The translations under genes were made by a program, and so were the position numbers. The notes beneath the pieces are model-generated. The model was not told the origin of the DNA, made no database searches, and saw only the letters and a list, made by a program, of their open reading frames with translations. This document shows positions 8,519 to 62,997 of a stretch of DNA of 64,000 nt, piece by piece (position 1 is the first letter of the stretch; each line of letters starts with the position of its first letter). Where the stretch lies: IMG/VR virus record IMGVR_UViG_3300023179_005186, positions 251,723 to 315,722 of that record; one strand, written 5' to 3'.

Positions 8519-11185
8519 ATGGATAATTGTTTATTTACAAGCTTTTATAAAAATTGTTATAAAGATATTGAAAATTTATCTGATAAAGAAGTTAAAAGAC
8601 ATTGGAATAAAATTGGTATTAAAGAAGGAAGATTACCTAATAAAATAATTTTTGATCAAAAATTTCCTAATTTTGATTATAAATCATGGATAAAAATAAA
8701 TAATAAATATAAATTTTCTAATAAATATGAAATATATGGTTGGGTATTTCTTAATAATAAAGAGATGTATAAAAAATATCTTGTTTCAAATGGATATATT
8801 TTAAAAGAAAATTCATCTGATAATTTTAATAAAATAGAAAGTAATTTAGTTTCTAATGATATGTCTGAAATTAATAAGGATTTAAGTAATTTAATAATTA
8901 CAAATAATATAAAAAAGATTTGGATATCAAATGCACTTAAACATTTTGAAGAAAGGATATTAAAAAAATATAATTTAGAACTTTATGATAAAATTAATGA
9001 TATAAAATCTTCAACATTATTTTTTGGATTATATGATAAATATGATTTTGAAAGAATCGTGAAACATTATGGAAAGAAATTTTTGATGTGGGGAGGAACA
9101 GATTGTGATGATAGATATAAAATAAGAAAAAATTCTATATTTGTTATTAAAAAAGTATCTAATTTAATACATATAGCAATATCTGAATCAATTCACAATA
9201 GATTAAATAAATACTCTATTGAAAATCAACTTGTTAATTTTAATTTGGTTGATAAAAATTTATTTAAACCAGTAGATAATACTGGAGATTGTATATACAT
9301 ATATAATGGCTTTACTAAGGGTAATGAATATATATATGGCGAGAGTATATATAAGCAAGTAGTTGAAAAACTTAAATTTGAAATTATATATAGTAATGAA
9401 TTAAATGTATCTTGGGAAATTATGCCATCAATTTATTCAAAATGTTTTATTGGATTAAGATTAACAGAACAAGATGGAAATGCAAATACAGTTCAAGAAT
9501 TTAATTCAATGAATATTCCAATTATTTTTAATGGGCCTGGTGGTATTAAATGGGAAAATACTGAAGATATAATTAAAAATATTAAAAAAATTTATTATAA
9601 TAAACATAAGAAAAATTTTGATATAACTGAAATAAATAACATTATGAATGAACCATTTAAATATGATTTTAGTTTAACAAATCACTATAATACTAATTTA
9701 GAATTAGTATATAAAAATATTGATTCTTTTATAAATTTAATTAAAAATTTTACAAACATTCTTTTTATATGTTCAGATCAACCAGGATATGGTGGAGCAG
9801 CAACAAATTGTTCAAAAATAGAAAATTTTATATCAAGTTATGGTCATAATTCTTTTAGTATATATTATTCATTTGATGAAAGTTTAAATGAATGTATTAA
9901 TGAAAATAACATGATATTTACAACTAGATCTAAATTATATAATGAATTAAATAATTTATCATATCAGCCAGATTTAATAATATTAAAAAGTTTTGTAGAT
10001 TTTGATTTAAAAGAAATATTTATTTGTCCCGTATTTTATTTAATACCAGGTATATATACAAATGAATTAAATATTAATTATAAAAATTTAAATACCAAAA
10101 ATAAAAATGATGAATATATAAATGCTAGTGTATTAAAACAAATAAATTTAGCAGATTATTCTTTTTCAAATAGTTATCATACTCATAAAATATTAAATGA
10201 TATTTATAATATTAATACATTATTATTTTATTCAACATTTGTTTCTTTTTATAATAAAAAAATAAATATTGATGATGAATTTGAAAATAGAAAATATAAT
10301 TTTGCATTAATAATTTCAAATTTCAATAGAGAAATAAAAAATGCAGTAAAGTCATTAGAATATCTTGAAAATAAATTAAATGTATTATTAATTGGAGAAA
10401 ATATACCTAATAAATATAAAAATTTTAGTAATTTTAAATGTATAGAAAAAGTTAAAAATGAAGAGATTATTAATTATTTATCAAATTGTAAATATATAAT
10501 TCAAGATAGTTTTTATGAATCATGCAGTAATGTTATTATAGAAGCTTTATTTTCAGGATGTATACCAATTAGCTCACATACTGAAAAATATAATGAATTG
10601 ATAAAATATGGTACACCTAATAATTATAATTTATCGATTGATTATATAGAAAAAGTAAAAAATATTTATGATAAAGATAAAATTAATTTTAAAAATACAA
10701 TATTTTACTATATAGATATTATAGAAAATAATGATTTTATTGATGATAAAATGATTAAATATATTGAAAAATTAAATTCAAATATAATAATAATATATTC
10801 TCAAACAAAAATTTATATTGATCCTGAAATATTTAGTTCTAAAATAATATTAATATTAGAAGAATTTTTAAATAATAATACATATAATTATTTAATAAAA
10901 CAAATATTTTGTAATAAAGAATATGCTTTAGTTACTAATTATAAATTACCATATATTTTAAATAAATATATAGGATTAGAAAAATTTGTATATTTAGGTT
11001 TAGAAAATATACTAATAAAGAATTTTGAAAAAGTTATATATCAAAATTATATTTGTAAAGAATTTGATTCAAATATACAAATATTATTTAAAACAGAAGA
11101 ATTTTTTAACATAGATACTATTGATAAATATTTAGAATATATAATTAATAATAAATTATTAGATAAAATAATGTTGGTTAATTAA
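8519..11185 (+). CDS. Multidomain GT-B (GT4-like) glycosyltransferase
   Basis: GYGGAAT N-domain motif; SFYESCSNVIIEALFSGC E-x7-E motif; second GT-B-like unit with DGNANTVQE. Confidence 0.75.
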   Translation: MDNCLFTSFYKNCYKDIENLSDKEVKRHWNKIGIKEGRLPNKIIFDQKFPNFDYKSWIKINNKYKFSNKYEIYGWVFLNNKEMYKKYLVSNGYILKENSSDNFNKIESNLVSNDMSEINKDLSNLIITNNIKKIWISNALKHFEERILKKYNLELYDKINDIKSSTLFFGLYDKYDFERIVKHYGKKFLMWGGTDCDDRYKIRKNSIFVIKKVSNLIHIAISESIHNRLNKYSIENQLVNFNLVDKNLFKPVDNTGDCIYIYNGFTKGNEYIYGESIYKQVVEKLKFEIIYSNELNVSWEIMPSIYSKCFIGLRLTEQDGNANTVQEFNSMNIPIIFNGPGGIKWENTEDIIKNIKKIYYNKHKKNFDITEINNIMNEPFKYDFSLTNHYNTNLELVYKNIDSFINLIKNFTNILFICSDQPGYGGAATNCSKIENFISSYGHNSFSIYYSFDESLNECINENNMIFTTRSKLYNELNNLSYQPDLIILKSFVDFDLKEIFICPVFYLIPGIYTNELNINYKNLNTKNKNDEYINASVLKQINLADYSFSNSYHTHKILNDIYNINTLLFYSTFVSFYNKKINIDDEFENRKYNFALIISNFNREIKNAVKSLEYLENKLNVLLIGENIPNKYKNFSNFKCIEKVKNEEIINYLSNCKYIIQDSFYESCSNVIIEALFSGCIPISSHTEKYNELIKYGTPNNYNLSIDYIEKVKNIYDKDKINFKNTIFYYIDIIENNDFIDDKMIKYIEKLNSNIIIIYSQTKIYIDPEIFSSKIILILEEFLNNNTYNYLIKQIFCNKEYALVTNYKLPYILNKYIGLEKFVYLGLENILIKNFEKVIYQNYICKEFDSNIQILFKTEEFFNIDTIDKYLEYIINNKLLDKIMLVN

Positions 11186-12048: not shown

Positions 12049-15000
12049 ATGAATGTATTAATATTATCAACTCAATATAATAGATATGGTGGAGCTGCAA
12101 CATGTGCTTATGAAACACATAAATATTTAATAAATAGATCAATAAAATCGGCAATAATATTTTTTGATAATTATATTATAAAAAATCCTGAAAAACTTAA
12201 TATAGATAATTTACCAAATGTTTATTCTGCAGAATTATTAAATGATTATTTAGACGTTAATTTAAATATATCTTGTTATAATGAACTTATTGATAATATA
12301 AATGATATATTATCTAATAATTTTATAATAATTGGATTTAATTATCTAGCTCCAGTAATAGGAAAAAAGTTATTTATTAATAAAACTTTATATTATATGA
12401 TAACAGGCACATGTTATATTTCGGATAGAAATATAAGATGTGCTCAGGATTTAATTAATAATGAGTTTACAGAAGAATATAATATTAATGAAGAAAATGC
12501 AATAAAATATTCTGATTTTATAATACCAAATTCACATTTAATGAAAAACTTATTAACAAATATATATAATATACATACAAATGAAATATATGATTTGCAT
12601 GAAATTTATAATTATGAATTAAAAAAAGATATTACTAATTATTTAGAATTAGATTATATTAAAAAATGGGACATTATATTTATTTGTTCTAATTTTACCA
12701 GAAAAGTAAAAAATATTGATTTGGTAAAAAAAATTTATGAATCAGAAGAATTAAAAGATTTGAAAAAAATAGTAATAGGTAAAAATTCAAAAGATTTTTT
12801 TAATGAATCTTTAAAAAATTTAACGATAATCGATTTTATTAACCAAGAAGAAATTTATAAATATTTAAAAAAATCAAAAATTGTAATAATACCTTCTTAT
12901 ATTGAAAGTTATAGTATCACAGGAATCGAAGCATGGGAAAATAGCTGTATTCCTTTAACATCTATTAATGTTGGATGTAATAAATTTATAAATAAATTTT
13001 ATATAATTGATTCTTATGAACCATTAAAATGGATAGAAAAAATTAAAATTATTTCAAAAAATTATGTATATCATCAAAACACATTTTATTTAAATTATAA
13101 AAAAGGTAATACTATTGATAAACTTATATTAAATAAAAAATCTAATAAAAAAAATGTATTATTTATTACTATAGACACTCCAGGTATAGGTGGTGCAGCA
13201 ACAAATACATATAATTTAATAAAAAATTTAGAAAATTATTTTAATATTTATTCAATATTTATAACTGATGATGATATAAATTTAATTGAAAATTTAGATA
13301 ATTATTTTATTATAAAAAATAATTCAGATTTAATAGAAGAATTAATTAAAAAATATGAATATTTTAATTTAAATAGTATAGAATTTCATGCAATATTTTG
13401 TAAAAATTATAAAGTTTTAATTAGTATAAAAAATATTTTTAAAAATACAAATATTATTTTTTCACCATCAGGTTTAAGACATATTACTAATTTAGTTGAA
13501 AATAATTTTATAAATAATTTAGAAATTAAACCTATTTCAAATATAAATTATACTGATATATATTCTGTTACTAATTTTTTTACAACTAATGATATTTGTT
13601 TAGATTATTTAGCAATGATTTATAGTGATATAGTTATTGCTAATAGTATTTTAACAAATAATTTAATAAAAAAACTTTATAAAAAATTTATGATAAATAA
13701 ATTATTTAAACCAGTATATACAACTAATATAAATTATAAAAATATAGATCAAGAAAGTATTTCTTTAATTAAAAATTATGATATATTATTTTGTTCATAT
13801 TCCTGGTCAAGACTTTGTAAAAATGTAAATTTAGTTTATGATTTAATAAATAAATTAACTAATAAAAAAATAATTGTAATTGGTAAAAGTTTTAAATTAG
13901 AATTAATAAAAAATAAATTAAATACAATAGAATATTATGAAAATTTATCCAATAATAATATGTTTGAAATTTATAAAAAATCTAAAATTTTAGTTATACC
14001 ATCATTTTATGATTCAAATCCAAATGTATTGATAGAAGCAATATCTAATAATTGTGGTATTATTACATCAAATAATATAGGAAATTCTGAAAATATTAAT
14101 AAAGATAATTTAGTAGAAAATCCAACTGATATTAATGAATGGATTCAAAAAATAGAAAATTTATTAAAAAAAAATAATTTTATTTATAACGGTCCAACAT
14201 CAGAAGAAATAAAAAATAAATTAATAAATATTATAAATAACATAGAATATAAAAAATCGATAGTTTCAATTTATAAAATAGATCCTGAATGGGATTCAGA
14301 TAATGAAAAAAAAAAATTTGTATATTTTACATATGATATTAAAACTAATGAAAAATTTGTAAAAGATATTATTAATTATGATATATATTTTGATATTACA
14401 TATAAATTAGGTATAGAATTAGGATGTAATGATATAAATTATATAATAGTTGATACTGAAATCAATATTAACGAATGTTACTATGTATATAAAAATCTAC
14501 CATATTTTGAAGATTATGTAAAGATATGGAAAATTAAATCAAAAAATGAATTATACTATTTTTCACAAGCAAATTATTACTTTATTAGAGGAAATTATCA
14601 TTATTTTTATTCAAATTTAATAGAATCAAGTTATTCTAAGGTAATATTTTATCCAGCAACATCCTTTAAACAATCAATATCAAAAATTAATTATGATATA
14701 ACATATACAAATAATCCTTATAATGTTGTATTAATACATGAAGATCCAAAGTATAAAATTTTTTATAAAAAAAATGTATGTTTAGAATTTAAAAAATTTG
14801 CACCTGATTCATTTATATATTTAGATTTAGAAAGAACATGGGATATTTGTTTTGTTGCAACTGAAAATCAATTAACTAAAAATCATCATTTATTTTTAAA
14901 TTTTTTAGAGTATTTAGATAATAATTTTTATAATTTTAAAATAATATATATTGGCAATATTACAAAAATATCAAATGATGAAAATTATTGTAATAAATTT

Positions 15001-15393
15001 AAAAATATTAAATTAGAATCAAAAATAAATGTGAGTAAAAAAAATTTAATAAAAATTTATAATCAATGTAGAATTAACATATTATTTTCAGGCAGAGATT
15101 CTTTTCCAAGGGTAATAACTGAATCATTAGCATGTGGATGTTTTAATATAGCATTAGATACTTTAAAAGATGGAATTTCTATATATAATGGATTTTTTGG
15201 TGAATTGGTTGGAGATTTATCTACTGATATAATAAATACTAATGGATCAAATTCATATATTGCATCAAAAAATTTATGGAAAAAAATAATTAAATTAATT
15301 AAAGAAGATTATCCACATTATAAAATATCCTGTGAATTTAAAAAATTATATAATATAAATAATTTTATTAATGAATTGAAGAATATTTTATAA
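12049..15393 (+). CDS. Triple GT-B (GT4-like) glycosyltransferase
   Basis: Two GGAAT motifs; three donor-binding motifs (PSYIESYSITGIEA, PSFYDSNPNVLIEA, SGRDSFPRVITESLACG). Confidence 0.8.
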   Translation: MNVLILSTQYNRYGGAATCAYETHKYLINRSIKSAIIFFDNYIIKNPEKLNIDNLPNVYSAELLNDYLDVNLNISCYNELIDNINDILSNNFIIIGFNYLAPVIGKKLFINKTLYYMITGTCYISDRNIRCAQDLINNEFTEEYNINEENAIKYSDFIIPNSHLMKNLLTNIYNIHTNEIYDLHEIYNYELKKDITNYLELDYIKKWDIIFICSNFTRKVKNIDLVKKIYESEELKDLKKIVIGKNSKDFFNESLKNLTIIDFINQEEIYKYLKKSKIVIIPSYIESYSITGIEAWENSCIPLTSINVGCNKFINKFYIIDSYEPLKWIEKIKIISKNYVYHQNTFYLNYKKGNTIDKLILNKKSNKKNVLFITIDTPGIGGAATNTYNLIKNLENYFNIYSIFITDDDINLIENLDNYFIIKNNSDLIEELIKKYEYFNLNSIEFHAIFCKNYKVLISIKNIFKNTNIIFSPSGLRHITNLVENNFINNLEIKPISNINYTDIYSVTNFFTTNDICLDYLAMIYSDIVIANSILTNNLIKKLYKKFMINKLFKPVYTTNINYKNIDQESISLIKNYDILFCSYSWSRLCKNVNLVYDLINKLTNKKIIVIGKSFKLELIKNKLNTIEYYENLSNNNMFEIYKKSKILVIPSFYDSNPNVLIEAISNNCGIITSNNIGNSENINKDNLVENPTDINEWIQKIENLLKKNNFIYNGPTSEEIKNKLINIINNIEYKKSIVSIYKIDPEWDSDNEKKKFVYFTYDIKTNEKFVKDIINYDIYFDITYKLGIELGCNDINYIIVDTEININECYYVYKNLPYFEDYVKIWKIKSKNELYYFSQANYYFIRGNYHYFYSNLIESSYSKVIFYPATSFKQSISKINYDITYTNNPYNVVLIHEDPKYKIFYKKNVCLEFKKFAPDSFIYLDLERTWDICFVATENQLTKNHHLFLNFLEYLDNNFYNFKIIYIGNITKISNDENYCNKFKNIKLESKINVSKKNLIKIYNQCRINILFSGRDSFPRVITESLACGCFNIALDTLKDGISIYNGFFGELVGDLSTDIINTNGSNSYIASKNLWKKIIKLIKEDYPHYKISCEFKKLYNINNFINELKNIL

Positions 15394-20066: not shown

Positions 20067-21950
20067 TTGAAAATATATATAAATATGAAACTAAATTTTT
20101 ATTTAATATATCTATTTTTTTATTTAATGCAAATTACTTTTTCAAATTGTTATGTAAATTTATTAAATAATAAAAATATTATAAAGCATAATTTTTTTAA
20201 AGCAAACTCACAAAAAAGAACATATCATTTATCTCAAAGATACATAGAAGAATTATTAAAAAAAATTAAATCTAATAATAGTAGTAATATAAATAATAAT
20301 GATTATAATTTGCTTAATGAAAGATATTATGAAACATTATTAAAAAAATTAAATTCAAAAAATATAACATTACAAAATAATGTTATTTTAGGTAATGATG
20401 ATAATAGAAATAATAGTATAGAATTTTTTATACCACATTTAAGGATAGTAACTAATAAAAGATCAAATAATAATTTTCTTTCTGGATTAGGAATAAAATT
20501 TGATCCTGTAGAAGAACAAATATCTGATTTTAATGAGGTATCAGATAATTCAGATTCTAATTTTGATATGAATAAAAGTATTTATACTAAAAGTAAAAAT
20601 TTTGAAGTATTAAAAAATCCAAATTTTGATTTTAATGATGTTGGTGGATATGAAAATGTTAAAAATGAATTAAGACAATGTGTTGATATATTAAAAAATT
20701 ATAAAAAATATAAAAAATATAATGTAAGAATTCCAAAAGGTTTAATTTTAGAAGGACCTCCTGGTACTGGAAAAACATTAATTGCTAAAGCTTTAGCAGG
20801 CGAAGCAAGATGCAGTTTTATTCCTGTTTCTGGTTCTGATTTTCAAGAAAAATATGTTGGTGTTGGACCAACAAGGATTAAAGAATTATTTCGTTTAGCT
20901 CGAGAAAATATCCCTACTATAATTTTTATTGATGAAATTGATGCATTGGGAAGAAAAAGATCAAGTGATGGTGAAACTTCTAGTAATGAGCGAGATAGTA
21001 CATTAAATTCTTTATTAGTTGAATTAGATGGTTTTAAAAATTCTACTGGAGTTTTTATGATTGCGGCAACAAATAGAGCTGATTTATTAGATAATGCTTT
21101 AACCCGTCCAGGAAGAATTGATAAAAAAATTTTTATTGGTTTACCAGATAAAAAAACAAGAGAAGCAATTATTAATATTCATATTAATGGAAAACCCTAT
21201 GACAATAATACAATTGATATACCTAATTTAGTAGAAATTACTGAAGGATTATCTGGAGCTCAAATAGAAAATTTATTGAATGAAGCTATGTTAAATGCAC
21301 TACGCAATAATGTTACACAATTTAATTATAATGATTTTGATTTTATCATGAATAAAATGATTGCAGGTTGGCAGCCAAACGAACACCAATTTACATCTGA
21401 TATTATTGATCATATTGCTATTCATGAAATGGGTCATGCTGTTGTAGGTTTCTTATCAAAGCATCATTCAAAAATGTCTAAAGTTGTTATTAATTTATCA
21501 TCACCAAAAAGTCCTGGATATACTACATTTGAAAGTTCTACTAGTAATATTTATATAAGAGAAGCTCTTTTTGAACATTTAATGATATTATTATCTGGTA
21601 GAATTGCTGAAGAAGTATTTTATAATGTTTCGGTAACAACAGGAGCATTAAATGATTTTGAAGAAGCTTTAAAATTAGCAGAAAAAATGGTAATATATTA
21701 TGGAATGGGTAGTAATATTATTTATCCAAGTAATAGTGAAAAATATAAAGAACTGATAGATAATGATGTAATTGAATTAATTAACAATGCATATAAATGT
21801 GCAAATATATTAATATTAGCCTGTAAAGATTTAATATATGAGACATCTGAAATATTAAAAAGAGATAAATTATTAAAAGCAGATTCATTAAATATTTTAA
21901 TAAATGAAAAATATAAAGATTTATTAAATTTAAAAATGGAATTTGAATAA
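20067..21950 (+). CDS. ftsH: FtsH-like ATP-dependent zinc metalloprotease (real start probably ATG 20085)
   Basis: DVGG, PKG...GPPGTGKT Walker A, IFIDEID Walker B, ATNR, RPGRID, HEMGH zinc motif, GRIAEE, TTGA. Confidence 0.95.
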
Positions 21951-35018: not shown

Positions 35019-37172
35019 ATGAATTTAAAAAAAGATAATGTAAAAGATGATTTAGAAAAAGAATTAAACTTGTTAGAAAATAATCAAGCAATTATAGATA
35101 TTGTTTTATCCATGGAACAAGAATTAATTGTTGAATCAAATAATAATATATTAGTTGATGCTGTTGCAGGTTCTGGGAAAACAACTACTATTTTACATAT
35201 GGCATTGAGACATCCAAACGCGAATATAATACAAATAACTTATAATAATATGTTAAAAAGAGAAGTTAGAAAAAAAGTAAATAGATTAGCAATTAAAAAT
35301 ATGATAATTCATACATATCATAGTTTAGCTGTAAATTTTTATGATGAATCAGCATATACAGATGAAGAAATAAAAAGATTATTGTTTCAAAATAAACCTA
35401 TAAAATATAAAGATATTAAACCAATTGATATTTTATTAATTGATGAAACTCAAGATATGGCTCAAGATTATTATAATTTAGTAAGAAAATTTATTAATGA
35501 TACAAAATCGATACCAAGAATCGTAATTTTAGGCGATAGATATCAAGCTATATATGAATTTAAGGGAGCTGATTCAAAATTTTTAACTTTAGCTGATAAA
35601 ATATGGAATATTGAATTTGAAAAGTTAAATTTAACAACATCATATAGATTAACCGATCAAATTTCATGGTTTGTAAATAAAATTATGTTGAATAAAAAAA
35701 GAATTTGTACAGTAAAATCTGGTCCTCCTGTAGATTATTATGTAGGTAATTCTTATACTCTATACAGAAAATTAGGTAAACAAATTAGATCAATGATTAA
35801 AAAAGAAGGAATTAAAGAAGAGGATATATTTATTTTATCACCTAGTATTAAATCATTAGAACCACCTTTTAAAAAATTAGAAAATTATTTAGTAAAACAT
35901 GGTCTAAAATGTATAACACCAGTATCAGATGATTCTAAGTTAGATGAAAAGGTAATATCAAATAAAATAGTTTTTACAACATATCATCAAGCAAAGGGTC
36001 GTGAAAGAAAAGTAATAATTTTATATAATTTTGATGATTCATATACACAATTTTTTTTAAAGTCAAATGATTCTAATAATATATGTCCAAATATTTTATA
36101 TGTGGGTGCTACTAGATCATCATATAAACTTATAGTTATTCAAGATAATAAATATAAACCATTAAATTTTTTAAATATTAAATATCTTAAACAAAATGAA
36201 AATTTAAATTATATTATTGTTAATGAACAAATTTTAGAAAATATTAATTTAGGATTAAAATCTACACAAATAAAAAAAACAAGTGTAACAGATTTAATTA
36301 AATTTTTAAATCCCAAAACTATTGATTTAATTCTAAATATTATTACTTATTCAAAAGAAAATAATTTATATGAAATAATTAAAAAACCATCTATAAAAAT
36401 AGATATACCTAATAAAATTAAAATTACAAATATTATTTCAAATAAAGAAGTTATTACATGGGAAGATGTTTCAGATTTAAATGGTCTTGTAATACCTGCT
36501 ATATATGAAAGAATTTTATTAAAAAAAAATTCTACAATTGAAAATTATTTAGAAACACAAATATCTGAATTAAATCCAATTTTAGATGATTTAAAAAAAT
36601 ATATTAAAAAATTAAAAATCCCTGCTACTAAACCTGAAGATTTTTTATTAATTGGTAATATATATCAGGCATTAAATAATAAATTATATGCAAAAATTGC
36701 TCAAATAAAAAAATATGATTGGTTAGATATAAATCATGTTTTTCAATGTCATAATTATATGAATTTTATTTTAGATCCAAATATTAAATTTGAAGTTCCT
36801 CTAATATCATCAAATCAAGAAAATTGTTTTATTTACGAACATAAAGAATTTGGTAATATACATATTACATCAAGACTAGATGCCATTGATTCTAAAAATA
36901 TTTGGGAATTTAAATGTGTAGATCATTTAAATTTAGATCATAAATTACAATTAATTATATATTATTGGATTTATTCTAAATGTTTTATGCAAAAAATTTA
37001 TGGAAAAAAAGATTTTATTTTGTTAAATATTAAATCTGGTGAAATGTTAAAATTAAAACCAGATAATTATTTAATTGAAAATATAATTGAATTAATCTTA
37101 CAGGATAAGTATGGTGAAAAAAAACAATTAGATGATGATGAATTTATAAATTTAATTGTAAATAAAAATTGA
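35019..37172 (+). CDS. UvrD-like SF1 helicase with a C-terminal PD-(D/E)XK nuclease
   Basis: AVAGSGKT, TYH, IDETQD, LGDRYQAIY, SYR, TYHQAKGRE, LYVGATR; C-terminal RLDAI...WEFKC...LQLIIY. Confidence 0.85.
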   Translation: MNLKKDNVKDDLEKELNLLENNQAIIDIVLSMEQELIVESNNNILVDAVAGSGKTTTILHMALRHPNANIIQITYNNMLKREVRKKVNRLAIKNMIIHTYHSLAVNFYDESAYTDEEIKRLLFQNKPIKYKDIKPIDILLIDETQDMAQDYYNLVRKFINDTKSIPRIVILGDRYQAIYEFKGADSKFLTLADKIWNIEFEKLNLTTSYRLTDQISWFVNKIMLNKKRICTVKSGPPVDYYVGNSYTLYRKLGKQIRSMIKKEGIKEEDIFILSPSIKSLEPPFKKLENYLVKHGLKCITPVSDDSKLDEKVISNKIVFTTYHQAKGRERKVIILYNFDDSYTQFFLKSNDSNNICPNILYVGATRSSYKLIVIQDNKYKPLNFLNIKYLKQNENLNYIIVNEQILENINLGLKSTQIKKTSVTDLIKFLNPKTIDLILNIITYSKENNLYEIIKKPSIKIDIPNKIKITNIISNKEVITWEDVSDLNGLVIPAIYERILLKKNSTIENYLETQISELNPILDDLKKYIKKLKIPATKPEDFLLIGNIYQALNNKLYAKIAQIKKYDWLDINHVFQCHNYMNFILDPNIKFEVPLISSNQENCFIYEHKEFGNIHITSRLDAIDSKNIWEFKCVDHLNLDHKLQLIIYYWIYSKCFMQKIYGKKDFILLNIKSGEMLKLKPDNYLIENIIELILQDKYGEKKQLDDDEFINLIVNKN

Positions 37173-50870: not shown

Positions 50871-51305
50871 ATGGAAAAATCTACTGTTTTTTATGAAAAT
50901 GTTGAAGAAGAAACCAAAAAAAATGATTTATACAGAAAAGTTGTTTATACTGGAAAACAACAATTTGTATATATGAGTATTGAACCAAACGATGGTATCC
51001 ACCTAGAAACACATCCGGATCATGATCAGTTTATAAGGATAGAAGAAGGCAAAGGAGTAGCAATTATTGATGATAAAGTACACAAATTATTCGATGGTAT
51101 AGGTATAATAATTCCAGCAGGATGTAAACATGAAATAAAAAATACTAGTTCTAAAAAAAAATTAAAATTATATTCTATCTATTCACCTCCAGAACATGAT
51201 AAAGATAGAATTGATAAAACAAATCCAGATAAAACAAATGTAAATTTACAAAAAAAATACTTAAAATATAAAAAAAAGTATTTTTCACTTAAAGAAAAAT
51301 TTTAA
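50871..51305 (+). CDS. Cupin-domain protein with a C-terminal KYLKYK tag
   Basis: IHLETHPDHDQFIRIEEG, IPAGCKHEIKN, LYSIYSPPEH, QKKYLKYKKKY. Confidence 0.88.
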   Translation: MEKSTVFYENVEEETKKNDLYRKVVYTGKQQFVYMSIEPNDGIHLETHPDHDQFIRIEEGKGVAIIDDKVHKLFDGIGIIIPAGCKHEIKNTSSKKKLKLYSIYSPPEHDKDRIDKTNPDKTNVNLQKKYLKYKKKYFSLKEKF

Positions 51306-51703
51306 CATCTTGGAGGTCTTACTAATGTAACATTACCTGAAACTTTTTGAAATTTTTTAGAATCATAATAACAAAAAGAGTGAATAACAACACAGTTATC
51401 TTTAAAATAAGTTGTTGAGAAACCATTACCAACATTACTAGGTGTATCAATACTTTTAGTTTTATTATTATAAAAACCAAATAATGAATATAATTCTCTT
51501 CCTTCTAAACTACCAATAGAAAGTTTATAGTTATTTTTACTAATTTCAGTAACTTCTACTCTAACTTCTGTTTCTGAAGTATTAACACTATCATTACTTT
51601 CAATTACAGTAACTAAACCTTTACCAACCCAAGGACCAACAAATTCCATATATAATTTACATATATATAAAAATATTTTATATGGTTTATAAAAAATTAT
51701 CAT
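51302..51703 (-). CDS. Hypothetical beta-rich protein (start probably ATG near 51649)
   Basis: MEFVGPWVGKG N-terminus resembles a lipocalin-like GxW strand. Confidence 0.5.
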   Translation of the reverse strand: MIIFYKPYKIFLYICKLYMEFVGPWVGKGLVTVIESNDSVNTSETEVRVEVTEISKNNYKLSIGSLEGRELYSLFGFYNNKTKSIDTPSNVGNGFSTTYFKDNCVVIHSFCYYDSKKFQKVSGNVTLVRPPRC

Positions 51704-51775
51704 TCAATTATAAAAAATTGAATATCTTATATTATTAAATATTTAATATAATATTTTTACTAATTCTTAATTAAA

Positions 51776-52396
51776 ATGAGTATTATAAGTAATTATTCAT
51801 TTTTAAATATATTTGTAAATAAAAGCAATGAAAATCTAATAGATTTTGATGATAATAAAAATTATAATGATTTTATTAATTTTAATTATTATAAACCTAA
51901 AAAAACAACGCCAATACCAATTCCTTTACCATTAAAAGACATTAATACTACAATAAAAAAATTATCTTTATTAATTTTGTATGATAACAATATTTTAGTT
52001 GGTATTGCAAAAGATAAACTAATTTTACCAAATTCTGAAATATATTCTTGTAATTTTAATAAAGAAATTATTAGAATAATGAATGAAGATCTAGGGATAA
52101 AGGAAACATTTGAATATAATATTATATATAAATATAAAAGTAATTCTCATTATTATATTAATTTTAAGAGTAAACCTTTTATAAATGGACCAATTGAATC
52201 TAAACAAAAAAATTATGAACAATCAAATCAATTAATAAAAGATTTTGAAAGTGAATTAATTTTAAATTATAATGGATATAATTCTGGATTATGTTGGGTA
52301 CCAATTAAAGAAATCATTAATTCAAATAATAAATATGTTGTCGAATCGTCATATGTAAAAGTAATTAGTTATTATTATCATCAATTTATTATTTAA
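51776..52396 (+). CDS. Hypothetical protein, possibly a degenerate Nudix fold
   Basis: LILPNSE...IIRIMNEDLGI and LCWVPIKEI; AAAATTGA at 51714-51721. Confidence 0.45.
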   Translation: MSIISNYSFLNIFVNKSNENLIDFDDNKNYNDFINFNYYKPKKTTPIPIPLPLKDINTTIKKLSLLILYDNNILVGIAKDKLILPNSEIYSCNFNKEIIRIMNEDLGIKETFEYNIIYKYKSNSHYYINFKSKPFINGPIESKQKNYEQSNQLIKDFESELILNYNGYNSGLCWVPIKEIINSNNKYVVESSYVKVISYYYHQFII

Positions 52397-52424
52397 TAAA
52401 TTATAATTTCTTTATTATATTATA

Positions 52425-53078
52425 ATGATTCAAGAATCTGCAAATATTTCTTTATTTATACAATTTATAACTGGTATAATTGATTTTTACGGGTTAAGTA
52501 TTGATGTACCAGAAGATAAACAAATCTTTAAAGAATTATTAAAAATTGAACTAGGTGTACAGACTGTAGAATTTTTCTATTATTATTGGATGGTAAATAA
52601 TTTATCATCTTCTAAAAATATAACTCCTACTAGATATTTTGATTGGATTATAACAACTCCAACAATGTTGGTTACTTTAATGGCATATTTAGATACAGGT
52701 AATACAAAAAATATAAATTCATTTATTAAATCTAATGAAAATATTATTGTAGAAGTTATTGTTCTAAATCTTTTAATGTTAATTTTTGGATTAATTAGTG
52801 AAATAAATCTATTAAATACAAAAACTGCAGTTGCGTTAGGATTTATTCCATTCGCATTATACTTTAAAATTATTTATGATAAATATATTACTAAAGATAG
52901 TACAATTGATCAAATTGGAATGTATGTATTTTTTGTTATAAGTTGGTCAATGTATGGAATAGCTGCTTTATTGTCTTACGATAAAAAAAACACTATGTAT
53001 AATATTTTAGATTTATTTGCTAAAAACTTTTTAGGTATTTTCTTAGTATATATACTTTGGACCAATAGAATCAAATAA
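52425..53078 (+). CDS. Viral (microbial-type) rhodopsin, group 1/VirChR1-like, DTT motif
   Basis: Seven hydrophobic helices; TM3 RYFDWIITTPTML; TM6 WSMYG; TM7 YNILDLFAKN with the retinal Lys; TM2 ELGVQTVE. Confidence 0.93.
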   Translation: MIQESANISLFIQFITGIIDFYGLSIDVPEDKQIFKELLKIELGVQTVEFFYYYWMVNNLSSSKNITPTRYFDWIITTPTMLVTLMAYLDTGNTKNINSFIKSNENIIVEVIVLNLLMLIFGLISEINLLNTKTAVALGFIPFALYFKIIYDKYITKDSTIDQIGMYVFFVISWSMYGIAALLSYDKKNTMYNILDLFAKNFLGIFLVYILWTNRIK

Positions 53079-53080
53079 TT

Positions 53081-53737
53081 TTAATTATACTCTCTAAAAT
53101 ATTTTAATGAATAAAAAGTAGTGTTTTTAACAATTATTTTTAAATGTTTTTTATCTAATAAATTAATAAATTGTTCAGTTAAATATCTTTCATTAATAAA
53201 ATTTAATCCAGTATCAGCAAGTTCATCTTTTGAAATATTTTTAATAGCATCTTTTCTTAAAATACTAAATCTAATTATATAAATAATTATATTTTTATAA
53301 TCAATAAAATCATTTTCATCCTTAGGAATAAATCTTTTAATTCCTTCTAAAACTGAATAAACTTTATCTATTAAATTATCTTCTAATGTATCCACTTCTA
53401 ATTCTTTTTTTAATAATTCAAAATCGTCTTTAGTTGGTACTGAAAGAAAATCATCATAACTAATTTCAATAATATCTTCTGAATCAAAACAATAATTATC
53501 CCAAATAACTTGTTTATTAACTTTATAAAATTCATTAATAATATTTATAATATCCAAAGAATAAATTTCTTCTGATATATTTTCCTCAATATATTTTTCT
53601 TTTAACTCATGTATAAAGTTATCAAAAAAATTATTATTTTCAATACAAATACCAGATTTAACTTTAGTGATATAATCTTTTTGATAATTTTCAATTATTT
53701 CACAAATTTTTGGAGGATAAGAATAAAATTCACTCAT
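53081..53737 (-). CDS. Hypothetical acidic protein
   Basis: 218-aa ORF. Confidence 0.55.
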   Translation of the reverse strand: MSEFYSYPPKICEIIENYQKDYITKVKSGICIENNNFFDNFIHELKEKYIEENISEEIYSLDIINIINEFYKVNKQVIWDNYCFDSEDIIEISYDDFLSVPTKDDFELLKKELEVDTLEDNLIDKVYSVLEGIKRFIPKDENDFIDYKNIIIYIIRFSILRKDAIKNISKDELADTGLNFINERYLTEQFINLLDKKHLKIIVKNTTFYSLKYFREYN

Positions 53738-55312: not shown

Positions 55313-55564
55313 ATGAATAAAAAATCATTATATTATAAATTTTTATTATGTTTAATACATTTTTTTCAAATGAATTTAGGTAAAGAAGATTGTGAAGATA
55401 TAAATTATAATAATTATAATTGTAATAATTTACAAGAAGATCTTATAACTGAACCAAAAATTAATAATTTAGATAATATTTCTGACAGATTTTATAGTGT
55501 AGATTTAGAGGATAAATGTTATAATAAAAATAATTTGAATTCAAACATAATTTATAATTATTAA
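55313..55564 (+). CDS. Hypothetical protein
   Basis: 83-aa ORF with a TTAA stop overlap. Confidence 0.4.
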   Translation: MNKKSLYYKFLLCLIHFFQMNLGKEDCEDINYNNYNCNNLQEDLITEPKINNLDNISDRFYSVDLEDKCYNKNNLNSNIIYNY

Positions 55565-56085
55565 TTAACTTTTTTATGTAATAATAAAGATTTTTTATAT
55601 ATTTTTATTGCTTCTTCTTTATCAAAAATATTACCTATTTTTACTTCTTTTTTTTCTAAATCTTTATAATGTTTATAAAAATAAATAACTTTTTCAATAA
55701 ATAATGCAGGTAAATCATTAATTGAATTAATTTTTGATTCATTTGGTGATACTTTTTTAGATGGTACTAGAATTAATTTAGCATCTTCACCTTTTTCATC
55801 AGATGTTTCTAAACATCCAATAATTCTACATTTTATATAACAACCTGGTATTAATTCTTGTTCCATATAAATTAATGCATCTAATGGATCACCATCACCA
55901 CTTAATGTTTGTGGAATAAAACCATAATTAAATGGAAATAAAAAAGGTGTGTACAAAATTCGGTCACAAATAATTGTATTTAAAATTGGATCAAATTCAT
56001 ATTTAATATTACTATTTTTAGCAATTTCAACATAAACTAATACTTCATCAGGATTAATTTCATTAATAAAACTTAATTCTTCCAT
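55561..56085 (-). CDS. ppa: Family I inorganic pyrophosphatase
   Basis: VEI, KYE, DR, NYGFIPQT, DGDPLD, DEKGEDAK, YKDLE. Confidence 0.95.
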   Translation of the reverse strand: MEELSFINEINPDEVLVYVEIAKNSNIKYEFDPILNTIICDRILYTPFLFPFNYGFIPQTLSGDGDPLDALIYMEQELIPGCYIKCRIIGCLETSDEKGEDAKLILVPSKKVSPNESKINSINDLPALFIEKVIYFYKHYKDLEKKEVKIGNIFDKEEAIKIYKKSLLLHKKVN

Positions 56086-56117: not shown

Positions 56118-56957
56118 TTATTTGCACAAGTTTTGAATACCTTTTGAATATGCATAAGGACTATTACCATCAGGACTAGTTGAATCAATATCAGCATCCC
56201 ATGTCATTACTCCTAATAAACCTTTATCAATTGCAAAAGTTGTTAAATTAAGAGCATCTTCTAAACTTAAGTTTCTATTCATATCATCTGATCCAGGCAT
56301 TAATCCAAGAATCATTTTACTAGGATCAACTTTCCAATTATCTAAATAAAAATTTAAATCATATTCTATTTGATTAGAATATGTAGATCCAGATTCAACC
56401 CATAAATCATATTCCATTGGTTGCCAAGCTGATAAATTTCCAATTGTAAGATTAAGTAAAGTTTGTTGATAACATCCTGTAGCCCATGCTTGGGCAGGTG
56501 TAGTTAAACTTATATATAATCCAGAATTTAGATTTCTTAAAGTATTTATTAGAGATGCTGCTTGTAATGCAAAATCAGATGGTACCACAGAATATGAATC
56601 TTCTATATCAAAGTCAACACCATCAAATCCACATTTTTGAACTATTTCATTTATATTTGAAGCTAAATCGCCTGGTCTTAAATATAAATCAGAGTTAGCA
56701 AATGGATAAGTTGCACCACCAACTGATAAACTAATTTTACTACCATGAGAATGAACTAAATTAGTAATTTCTTGAACTTCATTCATTGATATATTACCAA
56801 ATCCTGGAATATAATCAGTTGAATCAAAATTAAAGCTTGCAAAAGCTAAAATAATTCTAGTTTCAGAATTCAAAACAGAATTATTTATCATATCTTGAAC
56901 TTGTATCAATGGATCAGTTCCCCAAGTTGTAACGTAAGTAGAATAAGTTAAAGTCAT
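56118..56957 (-). CDS. GH18 chitinase-like glycoside hydrolase
   Basis: LAFA, SLSVGG, FDGVDFDIE (DxDxE), PMEYD, GVMTW. Confidence 0.92.
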   Translation of the reverse strand: MTLTYSTYVTTWGTDPLIQVQDMINNSVLNSETRIILAFASFNFDSTDYIPGFGNISMNEVQEITNLVHSHGSKISLSVGGATYPFANSDLYLRPGDLASNINEIVQKCGFDGVDFDIEDSYSVVPSDFALQAASLINTLRNLNSGLYISLTTPAQAWATGCYQQTLLNLTIGNLSAWQPMEYDLWVESGSTYSNQIEYDLNFYLDNWKVDPSKMILGLMPGSDDMNRNLSLEDALNLTTFAIDKGLLGVMTWDADIDSTSPDGNSPYAYSKGIQNLCK

Positions 56958-60621: not shown

Positions 60622-62997
60622 ATGAACAATATTTTTTTTGACATAAAATATTTAATAATATCATATATTTTTAAAAAAGAAACCCTTGAATATCTTATAA
60701 CAAATAATTATAATTTTAAACCTAATTTACATCAAAAAACTGTTAAAGCTTTTAATGAAAAAAAATATAATATCTTTGAAGACTTAATTTTAAATGGTTT
60801 ATTTGATAAAAATACAAATTGGTTTTATAAAGATAATTTTATTATTAAATTGATTGAAAGTGATTTGTATGAAAATTTAGTTTATTTTTATATAGATAAT
60901 TATAAAATTGATTTTTATAGAATAAGAAATATAAATTATTTAATGACAGCACTAGATAAAAATAAATTTAAAATTGCTGATTTTATAATTGATTATCATT
61001 CAGATTATAAAATTATAAATGAAATTGATTCTGAAACAAATTATAATGTATTGATTAAAGCATTAATAAAATCTAAAGATTATATTGCTTTTAAAATTCT
61101 AAATCATAATTTATTTGATAGTAATGTAATTTTATCAAATAATTCATTATTAACATATCTATCAATAATATATTTAAATAAATTTGATTTAACACAATCC
61201 TTAAATAAATTGCTAGAATTAATGCCTTGTGATAAATTTATTATTAATGATGAAACAGAAACTTTTTATTTAAAAGCTTGTAAAATTCTTGATTCTGATA
61301 AAATATTAGATGTAATTTCACATATAATAAATAAAATGTATAGTAATAAAGAAATTCCTTTTTATAAATTATCTAATATATTTAGTTATTTAAATTTTAA
61401 TAGTAAATTTGATAAAATAAAAGAAGAAATTGTATTTAATATAATAATACCTAAAAAATTAAAAAAAATTAATACATTTCATTTAGATAAAATGTTTTCA
61501 TATTTTTCACTAAATAATAAATTAATTTATAAAATAACAGAAAGTTATATTAAACTGTATGAAAAAAGAAAATTAAGTCCATATTCTTTTTATGGTATTT
61601 TAAAAATCTTAGTTAAATATGAATTAGATTCTGATTTGTATAAAAAGTTATTTAATCTGAATAATATTGATAGTATGAATAATTTTAAGAAATCTTTGTT
61701 TATAAAAATATTAGTATTATTTTCTAAATCAAATATTTTACAATCTTATTCAAATATTATCTTTAATAAAATTAATGACGAAACTAAAAATATTTTATTT
61801 AATTGGATTATATATTTTGGTTTAAAAATTGGTATAGAAAATTTTAATAAAACCTCATTATATTTAATAGATAAATTTGATATATCTAATATCACTATTT
61901 CTGATAATGATATTTTTCAAGAAAATTTTAATTCAATAGTTTTCTGGATAGAAAATTTACCAAAAGATCAAATAAATTCTGATATAGAATGTGTATTAAA
62001 TATTATTCAATCTATTGATAATATTAATATTAATAGTATTATTTATTTTCAAGATTTTTTTATTAATACTATATTTAAGCTTATTCATTTATTATGTGAA
62101 GATGATTTAATAAAGTTTTTTAATAAAATTCCAAATGAAATTAAAAATATTAATTATTCAGATGTTTTTGAAATAATTATTATAAAAAAATATTATAAAT
62201 TTATAAATTTATTAAAACCAATTATTAATTTAGAAGATAATTATGTAATATATTTTTCAGCTTTTCATAATTTAATAAAAAATAAACAAGATACTTACAT
62301 ATTTGAATTAGATGCTGTATCAATAATTGATCTAGGTAGGTCAAGTAAACTTATATATAATATATTTTATTTTGCTGTTTGTCATAAATGTGAAGATCTT
62401 TGTTATGAAATATTAACTAGATGTCATATAAATAAGCCATATTCTATTGATATTAATTTTGAGATATTACCAGATTATAATACTATCTTTATGTCAATGA
62501 TTAATTTTTCAATGAACAAATTAGTTAATTGGATTTTTGATGTTTATCCTATTTATAAATTAAATATTTTTCATGTTAATAAAAATGGTGATAGTGCTTT
62601 AATTCTGGCTCTTAAAACTAGACAATCAGATCTAGTAAATAAAATTATTGAAAAAACAGATGAAAATACTTTAATTTATATAAAAAAATTTAATCAAATT
62701 AATTTAATTTCAAATTACTTTTTTACAAATTCATCTGAATTATACTGGTGTTGTAAATTTCCTAATGAAAAAATAGGATTATTATTAGTTGATAAAAAAT
62801 TATCAAATCCTAATTATATTGATTCTGATGGCAATACTCCACTTATTTTATCATGTAAGCATTTTATGAAAAATCTTGCTATAAAACTTATAAAAACTAA
62901 TTTATGTAATACTAATCATATTAATAAACTTGGTAAATCTGCTCTAGATTATTGTAAGCAAAATAAACTTTATTCAATAAGTTATTTATTAGAATAA
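60622..62997 (+). CDS. Ankyrin-repeat protein
   Basis: NKNGDSALILAL, DSDGNTPLILSC, NKLGKSALDYC. Confidence 0.8.
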   Translation: MNNIFFDIKYLIISYIFKKETLEYLITNNYNFKPNLHQKTVKAFNEKKYNIFEDLILNGLFDKNTNWFYKDNFIIKLIESDLYENLVYFYIDNYKIDFYRIRNINYLMTALDKNKFKIADFIIDYHSDYKIINEIDSETNYNVLIKALIKSKDYIAFKILNHNLFDSNVILSNNSLLTYLSIIYLNKFDLTQSLNKLLELMPCDKFIINDETETFYLKACKILDSDKILDVISHIINKMYSNKEIPFYKLSNIFSYLNFNSKFDKIKEEIVFNIIIPKKLKKINTFHLDKMFSYFSLNNKLIYKITESYIKLYEKRKLSPYSFYGILKILVKYELDSDLYKKLFNLNNIDSMNNFKKSLFIKILVLFSKSNILQSYSNIIFNKINDETKNILFNWIIYFGLKIGIENFNKTSLYLIDKFDISNITISDNDIFQENFNSIVFWIENLPKDQINSDIECVLNIIQSIDNININSIIYFQDFFINTIFKLIHLLCEDDLIKFFNKIPNEIKNINYSDVFEIIIIKKYYKFINLLKPIINLEDNYVIYFSAFHNLIKNKQDTYIFELDAVSIIDLGRSSKLIYNIFYFAVCHKCEDLCYEILTRCHINKPYSIDINFEILPDYNTIFMSMINFSMNKLVNWIFDVYPIYKLNIFHVNKNGDSALILALKTRQSDLVNKIIEKTDENTLIYIKKFNQINLISNYFFTNSSELYWCCKFPNEKIGLLLVDKKLSNPNYIDSDGNTPLILSCKHFMKNLAIKLIKTNLCNTNHINKLGKSALDYCKQNKLYSISYLLE

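What the first reader, a model, noticed from the sequence alone, without database searches (positions are those of the whole stretch)
52425..53078. Group-1-type viral rhodopsin, a candidate light-gated cation channel
Seen: retinal Lys (DLFAK), a D-T-T motif at the BR 85/89/96 positions, Met at the BR93 tuning site, TM1 S...Q, TM2 E...Q..E and TM7 N...N..D...KN. Known: this residue pattern matches, from my recollection of the sequence, OLPVR1/VirChR1-type viral rhodopsins, which were reported to be light-gated cation channels. No retinal-synthesis genes are in the window. Inference: light-dependent manipulation of a host living in lit water; probably green-absorbing.
Basis: partly seen in the sequence, partly recalled or inferred. 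Interest (0 to 1): 0.6.

Follow-up and report, generated by a model that had tools for sequence, protein, structure and literature searches.

The report
Giant-virus group-1 rhodopsin, freshwater lineage
The gene is an intact group-1 viral rhodopsin, the family shown elsewhere to be light-gated cation channels, carried by a very AT-rich giant virus from lake water; it is one more member of a large known family, though from a branch that nobody has tested.

Summary
It matches Pfam Bac_rhodopsin (E 7e-25). Its best solved relatives are VirRDTS (1e-29) and OLPVR1 (3e-28), well ahead of group-2 OLPVRII (6e-15). An AlphaFold model (pLDDT 93.9) overlays OLPVR1 at TM 0.94. Trees anchored on a sequence identical to OLPVR1, on a VirRDTS-like sequence and on OLPVRII-like sequences put it on the group-1 (VR1) side of a 100/100 split. 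With bacterial proteorhodopsin outgroups, VR1 is still one side of a branch (SH-aLRT 91.5). All published VR1 pore and gate residues are present and invariant in 191 relatives. It is only 34-38% identical to the tested proteins and lies outside their subclade. Two residues of OLPVR1's Ca2+/Na+ sites differ (T88 to Leu, S208 to Gly). Channel activity is therefore a well-founded inference, not a result. No blh, crtB, lycopene cyclase or RPE65 gene lies on the 315-kb contig, which is about 28% of the genome. The virus recurs in lake and freshwater metagenomes. Colour is probably blue-green to green and remains untested. Verdict: a new member of a known kind, of moderate-low interest.

The parts
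52425..53078 (+). Viral rhodopsin group 1 (VR1/VCR1) gene, 217 aa plus TAA stop
   Evidence: ORF; Pfam PF01036 at 7e-25; PDB hits VirRDTS 1e-29 and OLPVR1 3e-28; trees
52428..52493 (+). TM1 (residues 2-23), with S9 (52449-52451) and Q13 of the central constriction
   Evidence: AF2 model helices; S9 and Q13 invariant in 191 relatives, while VR2 has T and L; mapped to OLPVR1 S11/Q15 (PMC7659345)
52512..52601 (+). TM2 (residues 30-59), with E42 (intracellular gate, OLPVR1 E44), Q46 and E49 (central gate, OLPVR1 E51)
   Evidence: VR2 has Ala at the E49 position
52623..52691 (+). TM3 (residues 67-89): R70, counterion D73 (52641-52643), T77, T78, M81, T84 (DTT motif), L85
52713..52733 (+). Short helix between TM3 and TM4 (residues 97-103), the VR1-type ICL2 juxtamembrane helix
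   Evidence: DSSP on the AF2 model; described as a VR1 hallmark in PMC7659345 and PMC6789865
52737..52802 (+). TM4 (residues 105-126), with N115 (partner of T78, the 'NT pair') and E126 (extracellular constriction, OLPVR1 E132)
52818..52886 (+). TM5 (residues 132-154)
52905..52964 (+). TM6 (residues 161-180), with retinal-pocket residues W174, Y177 and G178
52977..53063 (+). TM7 (residues 185-213): K188, N189, N193, second counterion D196, retinal Lys K200 (53022-53024), N201 of the S-E-N triad, G204
   Evidence: VR2 has Cys at the N201 position

Best explanation
The gene encodes a seven-helix, retinal-binding microbial rhodopsin of viral rhodopsin group 1 (VR1, also called viral channelrhodopsins, VCR1). 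It is carried by a freshwater giant virus (Nucleocytoviricota) and made in the infected protist. Inferred mechanism, by homology with OLPVR1, VirChR1 and VirRDTS: all-trans retinal, most likely supplied by the host, is bound as a protonated Schiff base to K200, with D73 and D196 as counterions held by R70 and T77. Light isomerises the retinal. This opens a path formed by TM1-3 and TM7 through three constrictions. The intracellular one is E42/T84/W174, the central one is S9-E49-N201 with Q13, and the extracellular one is R70/E126/K188/N189/N193. Cations (H+, Na+, K+, possibly Ca2+) then flow passively down their gradients, with at most weak outward proton pumping. The result is a light-dependent change in the host's ion or Ca2+ state, either at the plasma membrane or, as reported for OLPVR1, at internal ER-type membranes. 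Shown here: gene integrity, purifying selection, family membership, fold, conservation of all gate residues, and absence of retinal-pathway genes on the contig. Inferred: retinal binding, channel activity, ion selectivity, colour, membrane location and benefit to the virus.
For: Pfam Bac_rhodopsin scores 88 bits. phmmer against the PDB gives VirRDTS 1e-29 and OLPVR1 3e-28, against OLPVRII 6e-15. A profile of 30 relatives scores 162 and 160 bits against the two VR1 structures, 92 against VR2 and 42 against proteorhodopsin. The AF2 model has pLDDT 93.9, seven TM helices and the ICL2 helix. Foldseek gives OLPVR1 TM 0.94 at rmsd 1.5 A, VirRDTS 0.90, OLPVRII 0.86-0.87 and proteorhodopsins 0.77 or lower. 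The tree anchors were verified against the PDB: L089 is 100% identical to OLPVR1, L085 is about 92% identical to VirRDTS, and L088 scores 314 bits to OLPVRII. In the trees the VR1|VR2 split has 100/99 and 100/100 support with the query on the VR1 side. With nine bacterial proteorhodopsin-like outgroups, VR1 is one side of a branch at SH-aLRT 91.5. All residues named as fully or highly conserved in VR1 (PMC7659345, PMC13582892) are present. S9, Q13, E42, Q46, E49, R70, D73, M81, W174, K188, N189, N193, D196, K200 and N201 are invariant in 191 relatives, and N115 and E126 are conserved in 190 of 191. VR2 differs at six of the tested positions. dN/dS is 0.17-0.18. Channel activity of VirChR1 and VirRDTS, and Ca2+ release by OLPVR1, VirChR1 and TARA150, are published (PMC7659345, PMC10761956).
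Against: No function was measured for this protein or for any member of its subclade. It is only 34% identical to OLPVR1 and 38% to the VirRDTS-like anchor, and those two fall in a different VR1 subclade (84/87 against 87/78 support). OLPVR1's T88 (Ca2+ site A) and S208 (transient Na+ site) are Leu85 and Gly204 here and in most relatives, so Ca2+ inhibition and permeation may differ. VirRDTS pumps protons in E. coli (PMC6789865), so a pump role is not excluded. Transcription is not shown. Metatranscriptome contigs identical to the gene exist, but the neighbouring genes are covered too and DNA carry-over cannot be excluded.
Confidence: 0.7

Rival explanations
1. It is mainly a light-driven outward proton pump that energises host or viral-factory membranes, as first proposed for VirRDTS. 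Any channel activity would be a side effect seen in heterologous cells.
For: The BR-like Schiff-base region is intact (R70, D73, T77, D196, K200). VirRDTS acidifies the medium in E. coli (PMC6789865), and OLPVR1 pumps weakly (PMC7659345). At two OLPVR1 ion-site positions the query resembles VirRDTS (L85, G204).
Against: No carboxylic proton donor sits at BR96 (T84). The channelrhodopsin-like S-E-N triad and both TM2 glutamates are invariant in 191 relatives, which is hard to explain for a simple pump. VirRDTS itself gave reversing photocurrents in HEK cells (PMC7659345).
Confidence: 0.15
2. It is a light sensor or regulator without significant ion transport, for example one signalling through a host partner.
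For: The slow photocycles of VR1 proteins (hundreds of ms to 1.5 s; PMC6789865, PMC7659345) resemble those of sensory rhodopsins.
Against: The gene has no fused signalling domain in its 217 aa. No partner gene is conserved beside VR1 genes in 88 other giant-virus loci or in the 71%-identical relative. Needham et al. found no transducers either (PMC6789865).
Confidence: 0.07
3. It is a decaying or non-expressed passenger gene, or an assembly artefact.
For: Transcription was not proven.
Against: The frame is intact and dN/dS is 0.17-0.18. Base composition matches the genome. An independent lake metagenome contig (L292, another study) holds the same gene in the same gene order, and 20 runs from 8 studies hold all or part of the stretch.
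Confidence: 0.03

Closest known systems
OLPVR1, Organic Lake phycodnavirus rhodopsin 1 (PDB 7AKX/7AKY/9IN7); VirChR1 is 61% identical to it
   Same: Best structural match (TM 0.94, rmsd 1.5 A). Same DTT motif and Met at BR93. The S-E-N triad, both TM2 glutamates, the T-N pair, the ICL2 helix, and the extracellular R/E/K/N/N cluster are all conserved.
   Different: Only about 34% identity and a different VR1 subclade. T88 becomes L85 and S208 becomes G204 at the published Ca2+/Na+ sites. Near the beta-ionone ring, F185 becomes A181 and L142 becomes V136 (alignment). The habitat is freshwater rather than a hypersaline lake.
VirRDTS of Phaeocystis globosa virus (PDB 6JO0)
   Same: Best sequence match in the PDB (1e-29; profile 162 bits). 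Same residues at the OLPVR1-variable positions (hydrophobic at the T88 position, Gly at the S208 position, IAAL in TM6). The virus likewise lacks its own retinal pathway, as far as the contig shows.
   Different: DTT rather than DTS. About 38% identity. Different subclade.
OLPVRII / viral rhodopsin group 2 (PDB 6SQG)
   Same: Sister family within giant-virus rhodopsins. Shares R70, D73, T77, T78, M81, N115, N189, N193, D196 and K200.
   Different: VR2 has T, L, S, A, V and C at query positions 9, 13, 46, 49, 84 and 201. It scores 92 against 160 bits, and lies across a 100/100 split.
ChoanoVirus rhodopsin photosystem (Needham 2019)
   Same: An extremely AT-rich giant virus carrying a VR1 gene, with a GH18 chitinase-family gene nearby.
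   Different: ChoanoViruses carry crtB/crtI/crtY/blh and three rhodopsins. This 315-kb contig has one rhodopsin and none of those genes. The heliorhodopsin scan was uninformative.

Membership tests
Viral rhodopsin group 1 (VR1 / VCR1) | Type-1 rhodopsin fold with the retinal Lys in TM7 | tested here: met
   PF01036 at 88 bits; seven helices at pLDDT 93.9; K200 in DLFAK
Viral rhodopsin group 1 (VR1 / VCR1) | Falls with OLPVR1 and VirRDTS, apart from VR2, in a phylogeny | tested here: met
   Split support 100/99 and 100/100. With proteorhodopsin outgroups, VR1 is one side of a branch at SH-aLRT 91.5. Anchors verified against the PDB
Viral rhodopsin group 1 (VR1 / VCR1) | Fully conserved S11, Q15, E51, K192, N193, N197, N205 (OLPVR1 numbering; PMC7659345) | tested here: met
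   S9, Q13, E49, K188, N189, N193, N201 (alignment); invariant in 191 relatives
Viral rhodopsin group 1 (VR1 / VCR1) | Core set E44, E51, R73, D76, D200, K204 (PMC13582892) | tested here: met
   E42, E49, R70, D73, D196, K200
Viral rhodopsin group 1 (VR1 / VCR1) | DTS or DTT at BR positions 85/89/96 | tested here: met
   D73-T77-T84
Viral rhodopsin group 1 (VR1 / VCR1) | T81-N121 pair in place of the channelrhodopsin DC pair | tested here: met
   T78 and N115
Viral rhodopsin group 1 (VR1 / VCR1) | Membrane-associated ICL2 helix between TM3 and TM4 | tested here: met
   Helix at residues 97-103 in the AF2 model. This is a model only
Viral rhodopsin group 1 (VR1 / VCR1) | Encoded by a nucleocytoplasmic large DNA virus | tested here: met
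   IMG/VR virus record; three NCLDV capsid paralogs on the same contig
Viral rhodopsin group 1 (VR1 / VCR1) | Light-gated cation conductance inhibited by millimolar Ca2+ | not testable with these tools
   Needs electrophysiology. The OLPVR1 Ca2+ site residue T88 and Na+ site residue S208 are L85 and G204 here
Viral rhodopsin group 1 (VR1 / VCR1) | Dimer in the membrane (VR2 is a pentamer) | not tested
   No complex prediction was run
Viral rhodopsin group 2 (VR2) | VR2 residue states (T, L, S, A, V, C at query positions 9, 13, 46, 49, 84, 201) | tested here: not met
   The query has S, Q, Q, E, T, N
Proton-pumping BR/PR-type rhodopsins | Carboxylic proton donor at BR96 (the PR E108 position) | tested here: not met
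   T84. Proteorhodopsins score only 42 bits to the family profile

The most novel reading that the evidence does not exclude
The query's subclade forms the bulk of metagenomic VR1 in my sample. It keeps all gate residues but replaces OLPVR1's Ca2+-site T88 and Na+-site S208 with Leu and Gly. It could be a functionally distinct set of viral channelrhodopsins, for example insensitive to Ca2+ block and able to work at the plasma membrane of freshwater protists, where external Ca2+ is low.
Probability: 0.15. Interest if true: 0.55.

Novelty: new member of a known kind. Interest (0 to 1): 0.33.

Why it matters
VR1 proteins are the only rhodopsin channels known to release Ca2+ from internal stores, and their role in infected plankton is still open. 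This gene adds a freshwater, extremely AT-rich giant virus to the carriers. It also marks a large, well-conserved VR1 branch with no tested member and with natural substitutions at the published Ca2+/Na+ sites, which makes it a useful comparison for the mechanism of Ca2+ inhibition and for optogenetic tool mining. As a discovery it is incremental: more than 1,100 homologs already sit in public metagenomes.

Tried and rejected
1. An exact degenerate-pattern scan for OLPVR1 in IMG/VR found nothing.
2. A single-protein locus search for VR2 returned only itself. An alignment query was needed.
3. A 555-aa flavoprotein at contig position 220,449-222,116 hit Amino_oxidase and, weakly, Lycopene_cycl. 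Only its N-terminal Rossmann part matches phytoene desaturase models, far below their cut-offs (42 against 569 bits). It is therefore not counted as crtI.
4. No conserved neighbour was found. The flanking ORFs have no Pfam match and no homolog near VR1 genes in 88 other loci. Only the closest lineage (L169, L292) keeps the local gene order.
5. Expression was not settled. Metatranscriptome contigs identical to the gene exist (X2: 52239-52561 and 52806-53112; X20: 52463-52653), but flanking genes on both strands are covered too. These are Logan contigs, so strand, transcript ends and DNA carry-over cannot be judged.
7. The heliorhodopsin scan rang nowhere, not even in the control genomes, so it is uninformative.
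8. The 2025 preprint on red-shifted viral channels concerns ChR-like proteins, not VR1, and was set aside.
9. No AAAATTGA-type mimivirus early-promoter motif lies in the 28-nt upstream spacer.

Full report
**Where the window lies.** The window is bases 251,723-315,722 of a 315,722-bp linear IMG/VR virus record that CheckV rates about 28% complete. It is extremely AT-rich: 18.6% GC in the window and 20.2% over the contig. Three NCLDV major-capsid paralogs lie on the same contig, so it is a giant virus.

**Observation.** A 217-codon frame runs from the first ATG at 52425 to TAA at 53076-53078 on the + strand.
- The retinal Lys is K200, within DLFAK.
- D73, T77 and T84 sit at BR positions 85, 89 and 96, and M81 sits at BR93.
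- TM1 carries S9 and Q13; TM2 carries E42, Q46 and E49.
- TM7 carries N189, N193, D196, K200 and N201.

At this composition about one codon in ten would be a stop. A stop-free run of this length is expected about 1e-6 times in the window. The gene's GC (22%; GC3 13%) matches the genome. dN/dS is 0.17 against a 98%-identical lake variant (L292) and 0.18 against a 77%-identical relative (L169). It is a real, resident gene under purifying selection.

**Family by sequence and fold.**
- Pfam Bac_rhodopsin scores 88 bits against a 24.6-bit cut-off.
- Against all PDB chains the best matches are VirRDTS (6JO0, 1e-29) and OLPVR1 (7AKX, 3e-28). Group-2 OLPVRII follows at 6e-15, and everything else is at 7e-5 or weaker.
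- A profile of the query and 29 relatives widens the gap: 162 and 160 bits for the two VR1 structures, 92 for VR2 and 42 for proteorhodopsin.
- An AlphaFold2 model built on that alignment has mean pLDDT 93.9. It shows seven TM helices plus a short helix (residues 97-103) between TM3 and TM4, the ICL2 helix described as typical of VR1.
- Foldseek ranks OLPVR1 first (TM 0.94, rmsd 1.5 A), then VirRDTS (0.90), OLPVRII (0.86-0.87) and proteorhodopsins (about 0.77).

**Phylogeny.** No named reference sequences were on hand, so I fetched anchors by reference. I used short degenerate DNA patterns taken from the alignments printed, and checked each anchor against the PDB.
- L089:4286-4954 is 100% identical to crystallised OLPVR1.
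- L085:5560-6234 is about 92% identical to VirRDTS.
- L088 scores 314 bits to OLPVRII.

I added 80 IMG/VR loci related to the query, 40 VR2 loci and 33 loci nearer OLPVR1, plus database homologs. Sequences were thinned by identity.

IQ-TREE (LG+C20+F+G4) gave a VR2|VR1 split with 100/99 support in a 72-row tree and 100/100 in a 43-row tree. The query is on the VR1 side in both. Nine bacterial proteorhodopsin-like outgroups were then added. They were found with an RYIDWLLTVPL pattern typed from my own knowledge and picked by that motif; their identity was not checked separately with Pfam or the PDB. With them the 36 VR1 rows remain one side of a branch (SH-aLRT 91.5, quick search).

Inside VR1, OLPVR1 and the VirRDTS-like anchor fall in a nine-row subclade (84/87). 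The query falls in the other, larger set (87/78), which in the rooted quick tree is a grade around the first. VirChR1 is reported as 61% identical to OLPVR1 (PMC10761956), so it should lie with OLPVR1. The query is thus VR1, but no functionally tested protein that I could place belongs to its subclade. Identity is 34% to OLPVR1, 38% to the VirRDTS-like anchor and 31% to VR2.

**Diagnostic residues.** Zabelskii et al. (PMC7659345) name S11, Q15, E51, K192, N193, N197 and N205 as fully conserved in VR1. They also name E44/E51 in TM2, the T81-N121 pair, and an extracellular cluster of R73, E132, K192, N193 and N197. The 2026 paper (PMC13582892) names E44, E51, R73, D76, D200 and K204 as the conserved core.

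Through the HMMER alignment these map to S9, Q13, E42, E49, R70, D73, T78, N115, E126, K188, N189, N193, D196, K200 and N201. All are present. In 191 sequences on the query's side, all of these except T78, N115 and E126 are invariant; those three hold in 190 of 191. The 35 VR2 sequences carry T, L, S, A, V and C at positions 9, 13, 46, 49, 84 and 201.

Two positions depart from OLPVR1. T88, which with T87 forms Ca2+ site A, is Leu85. S208, part of the transient Na+ site, is Gly204. Most relatives and the VirRDTS-like anchor share a hydrophobic residue and Gly at these positions. Near the beta-ionone ring, OLPVR1's F185 and L142 are A181 and V136 here (alignment).

**Mechanism.** By homology, the protein binds all-trans retinal at K200 with D73/D196 as counterions. 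On illumination it opens a TM1-3/TM7 path through the E42, S9-E49-N201 and R70/E126/K188/N189/N193 constrictions. It then conducts cations passively, with at most weak proton pumping. This rests on published work:
- patch-clamp of VirChR1 and VirRDTS (PMC7659345);
- ER-localised, light-induced Ca2+ release by OLPVR1, VirChR1 and TARA150 (PMC10761956);
- open-state and Ca2+-blocked structures of OLPVR1 (PMC13582892).

The proton-pump reading (VirRDTS in E. coli, PMC6789865) remains the main rival. Against it, the proton-donor position is Thr, and the channel-type triad is invariant across the family.

**Colour.** Relatives with the same Met absorb at 500 nm (OLPVR1), 507 nm (VirChR1) and 'in the green' (VirRDTS). 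Blue-green to green is therefore likely but untested.

**Retinal supply.** Six-frame family searches of the whole contig found no BCD/blh, no SQS_PSY (crtB), no RPE65, and no lycopene cyclase above cut-off. One 555-aa flavoprotein outside the window matches Amino_oxidase. Only its Rossmann part resembles desaturases, far below their cut-offs. PF01036 finds a single rhodopsin. Since about 70% of the genome is missing, 'host-supplied retinal' is an inference.

**Context.**
- The immediate neighbours have no Pfam domains apart from a cupin. They are the cupin at 50871-51305, a 133-aa ORF on the minus strand, a 206-aa ORF, and a 218-aa ORF on the minus strand.
- That order is kept in the 98% and 77% relatives. 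It is not kept in a 71% relative or in 88 other VR1 loci. The rhodopsin therefore has no conserved partner gene.
- The 28-nt upstream spacer shows no recognisable motif.

**Habitat and expression.** The stretch, or part of it, is held by 20 runs from 8 studies dated 2013-2024, labelled lake water, freshwater or simply 'metagenome'. Two freshwater metatranscriptome runs contain short contigs identical to parts of the gene (52239-52561, 52806-53112, 52463-52653). Neighbouring genes are covered as well, and contigs cannot show strand or exclude DNA, so transcription is compatible but not shown. An independent 2,428-bp DNA contig confirms the assembly and gene order.

**Verdict.** The caveats are the distance from tested members, the two changed ion-site residues, the freshwater setting and the untested colour. 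More than 1,100 homologs exist in public data, so this is a new member of a known kind.

Noticed in passing
window 20067-21950 (+): A 627-aa FtsH-like protein (AAA 7.8e-41 plus Peptidase_M41 3.2e-26). A membrane AAA+ metalloprotease is unusual cargo for a virus.
   Followed up: no
window 56118-56957 (-) and 55561-56085 (-): A GH18 (chitinase-family) protein sits next to a soluble inorganic pyrophosphatase (3e-48). Chitin degradation genes were highlighted in the AT-rich ChoanoViruses (PMC6789865).
   Followed up: no
whole window and contig G000:C1: GC is 18.6% in the window and 20.2% over 315 kb. That is below the 21-23% quoted as the lowest values for giant viruses in PMC6789865.
   Followed up: partly
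G000:C1:103215-115554 (outside the window; loci L166-L168): Three NCLDV major-capsid-domain matches, one of them inside a 3,249-aa open frame.
   Followed up: no
G000:C1:220449-222116 (L003:1471-3138, outside the window): A 555-aa FAD amine-oxidase-family protein. Only its N-terminal Rossmann part resembles phytoene or zeta-carotene desaturases and HpnE, and no crtB, crtY or blh gene lies beside it.
   Followed up: partly
window 8519-11185 and 12049-15393 (+): Two very large group-1 glycosyltransferase proteins (888 and 1,114 aa). A UvrD-like helicase lies at 35019-37172 and an ankyrin-repeat protein at 60622-62997.
   Followed up: no
window 50871-53737; L169 6543-9897; L292: The local order cupin / small ORF (-) / ~205-aa ORF (+) / rhodopsin (+) / ~220-aa ORF (-) is kept in the 77%- and 98%-identical relatives only. 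The three unnamed ORFs have no Pfam match.
   Followed up: partly
window 52586-52873 (-): An antisense open frame inside the rhodopsin gene finds 'homologs' in four other VR1 loci. This is most simply the shadow of the conserved sense frame, not a gene.
   Followed up: no
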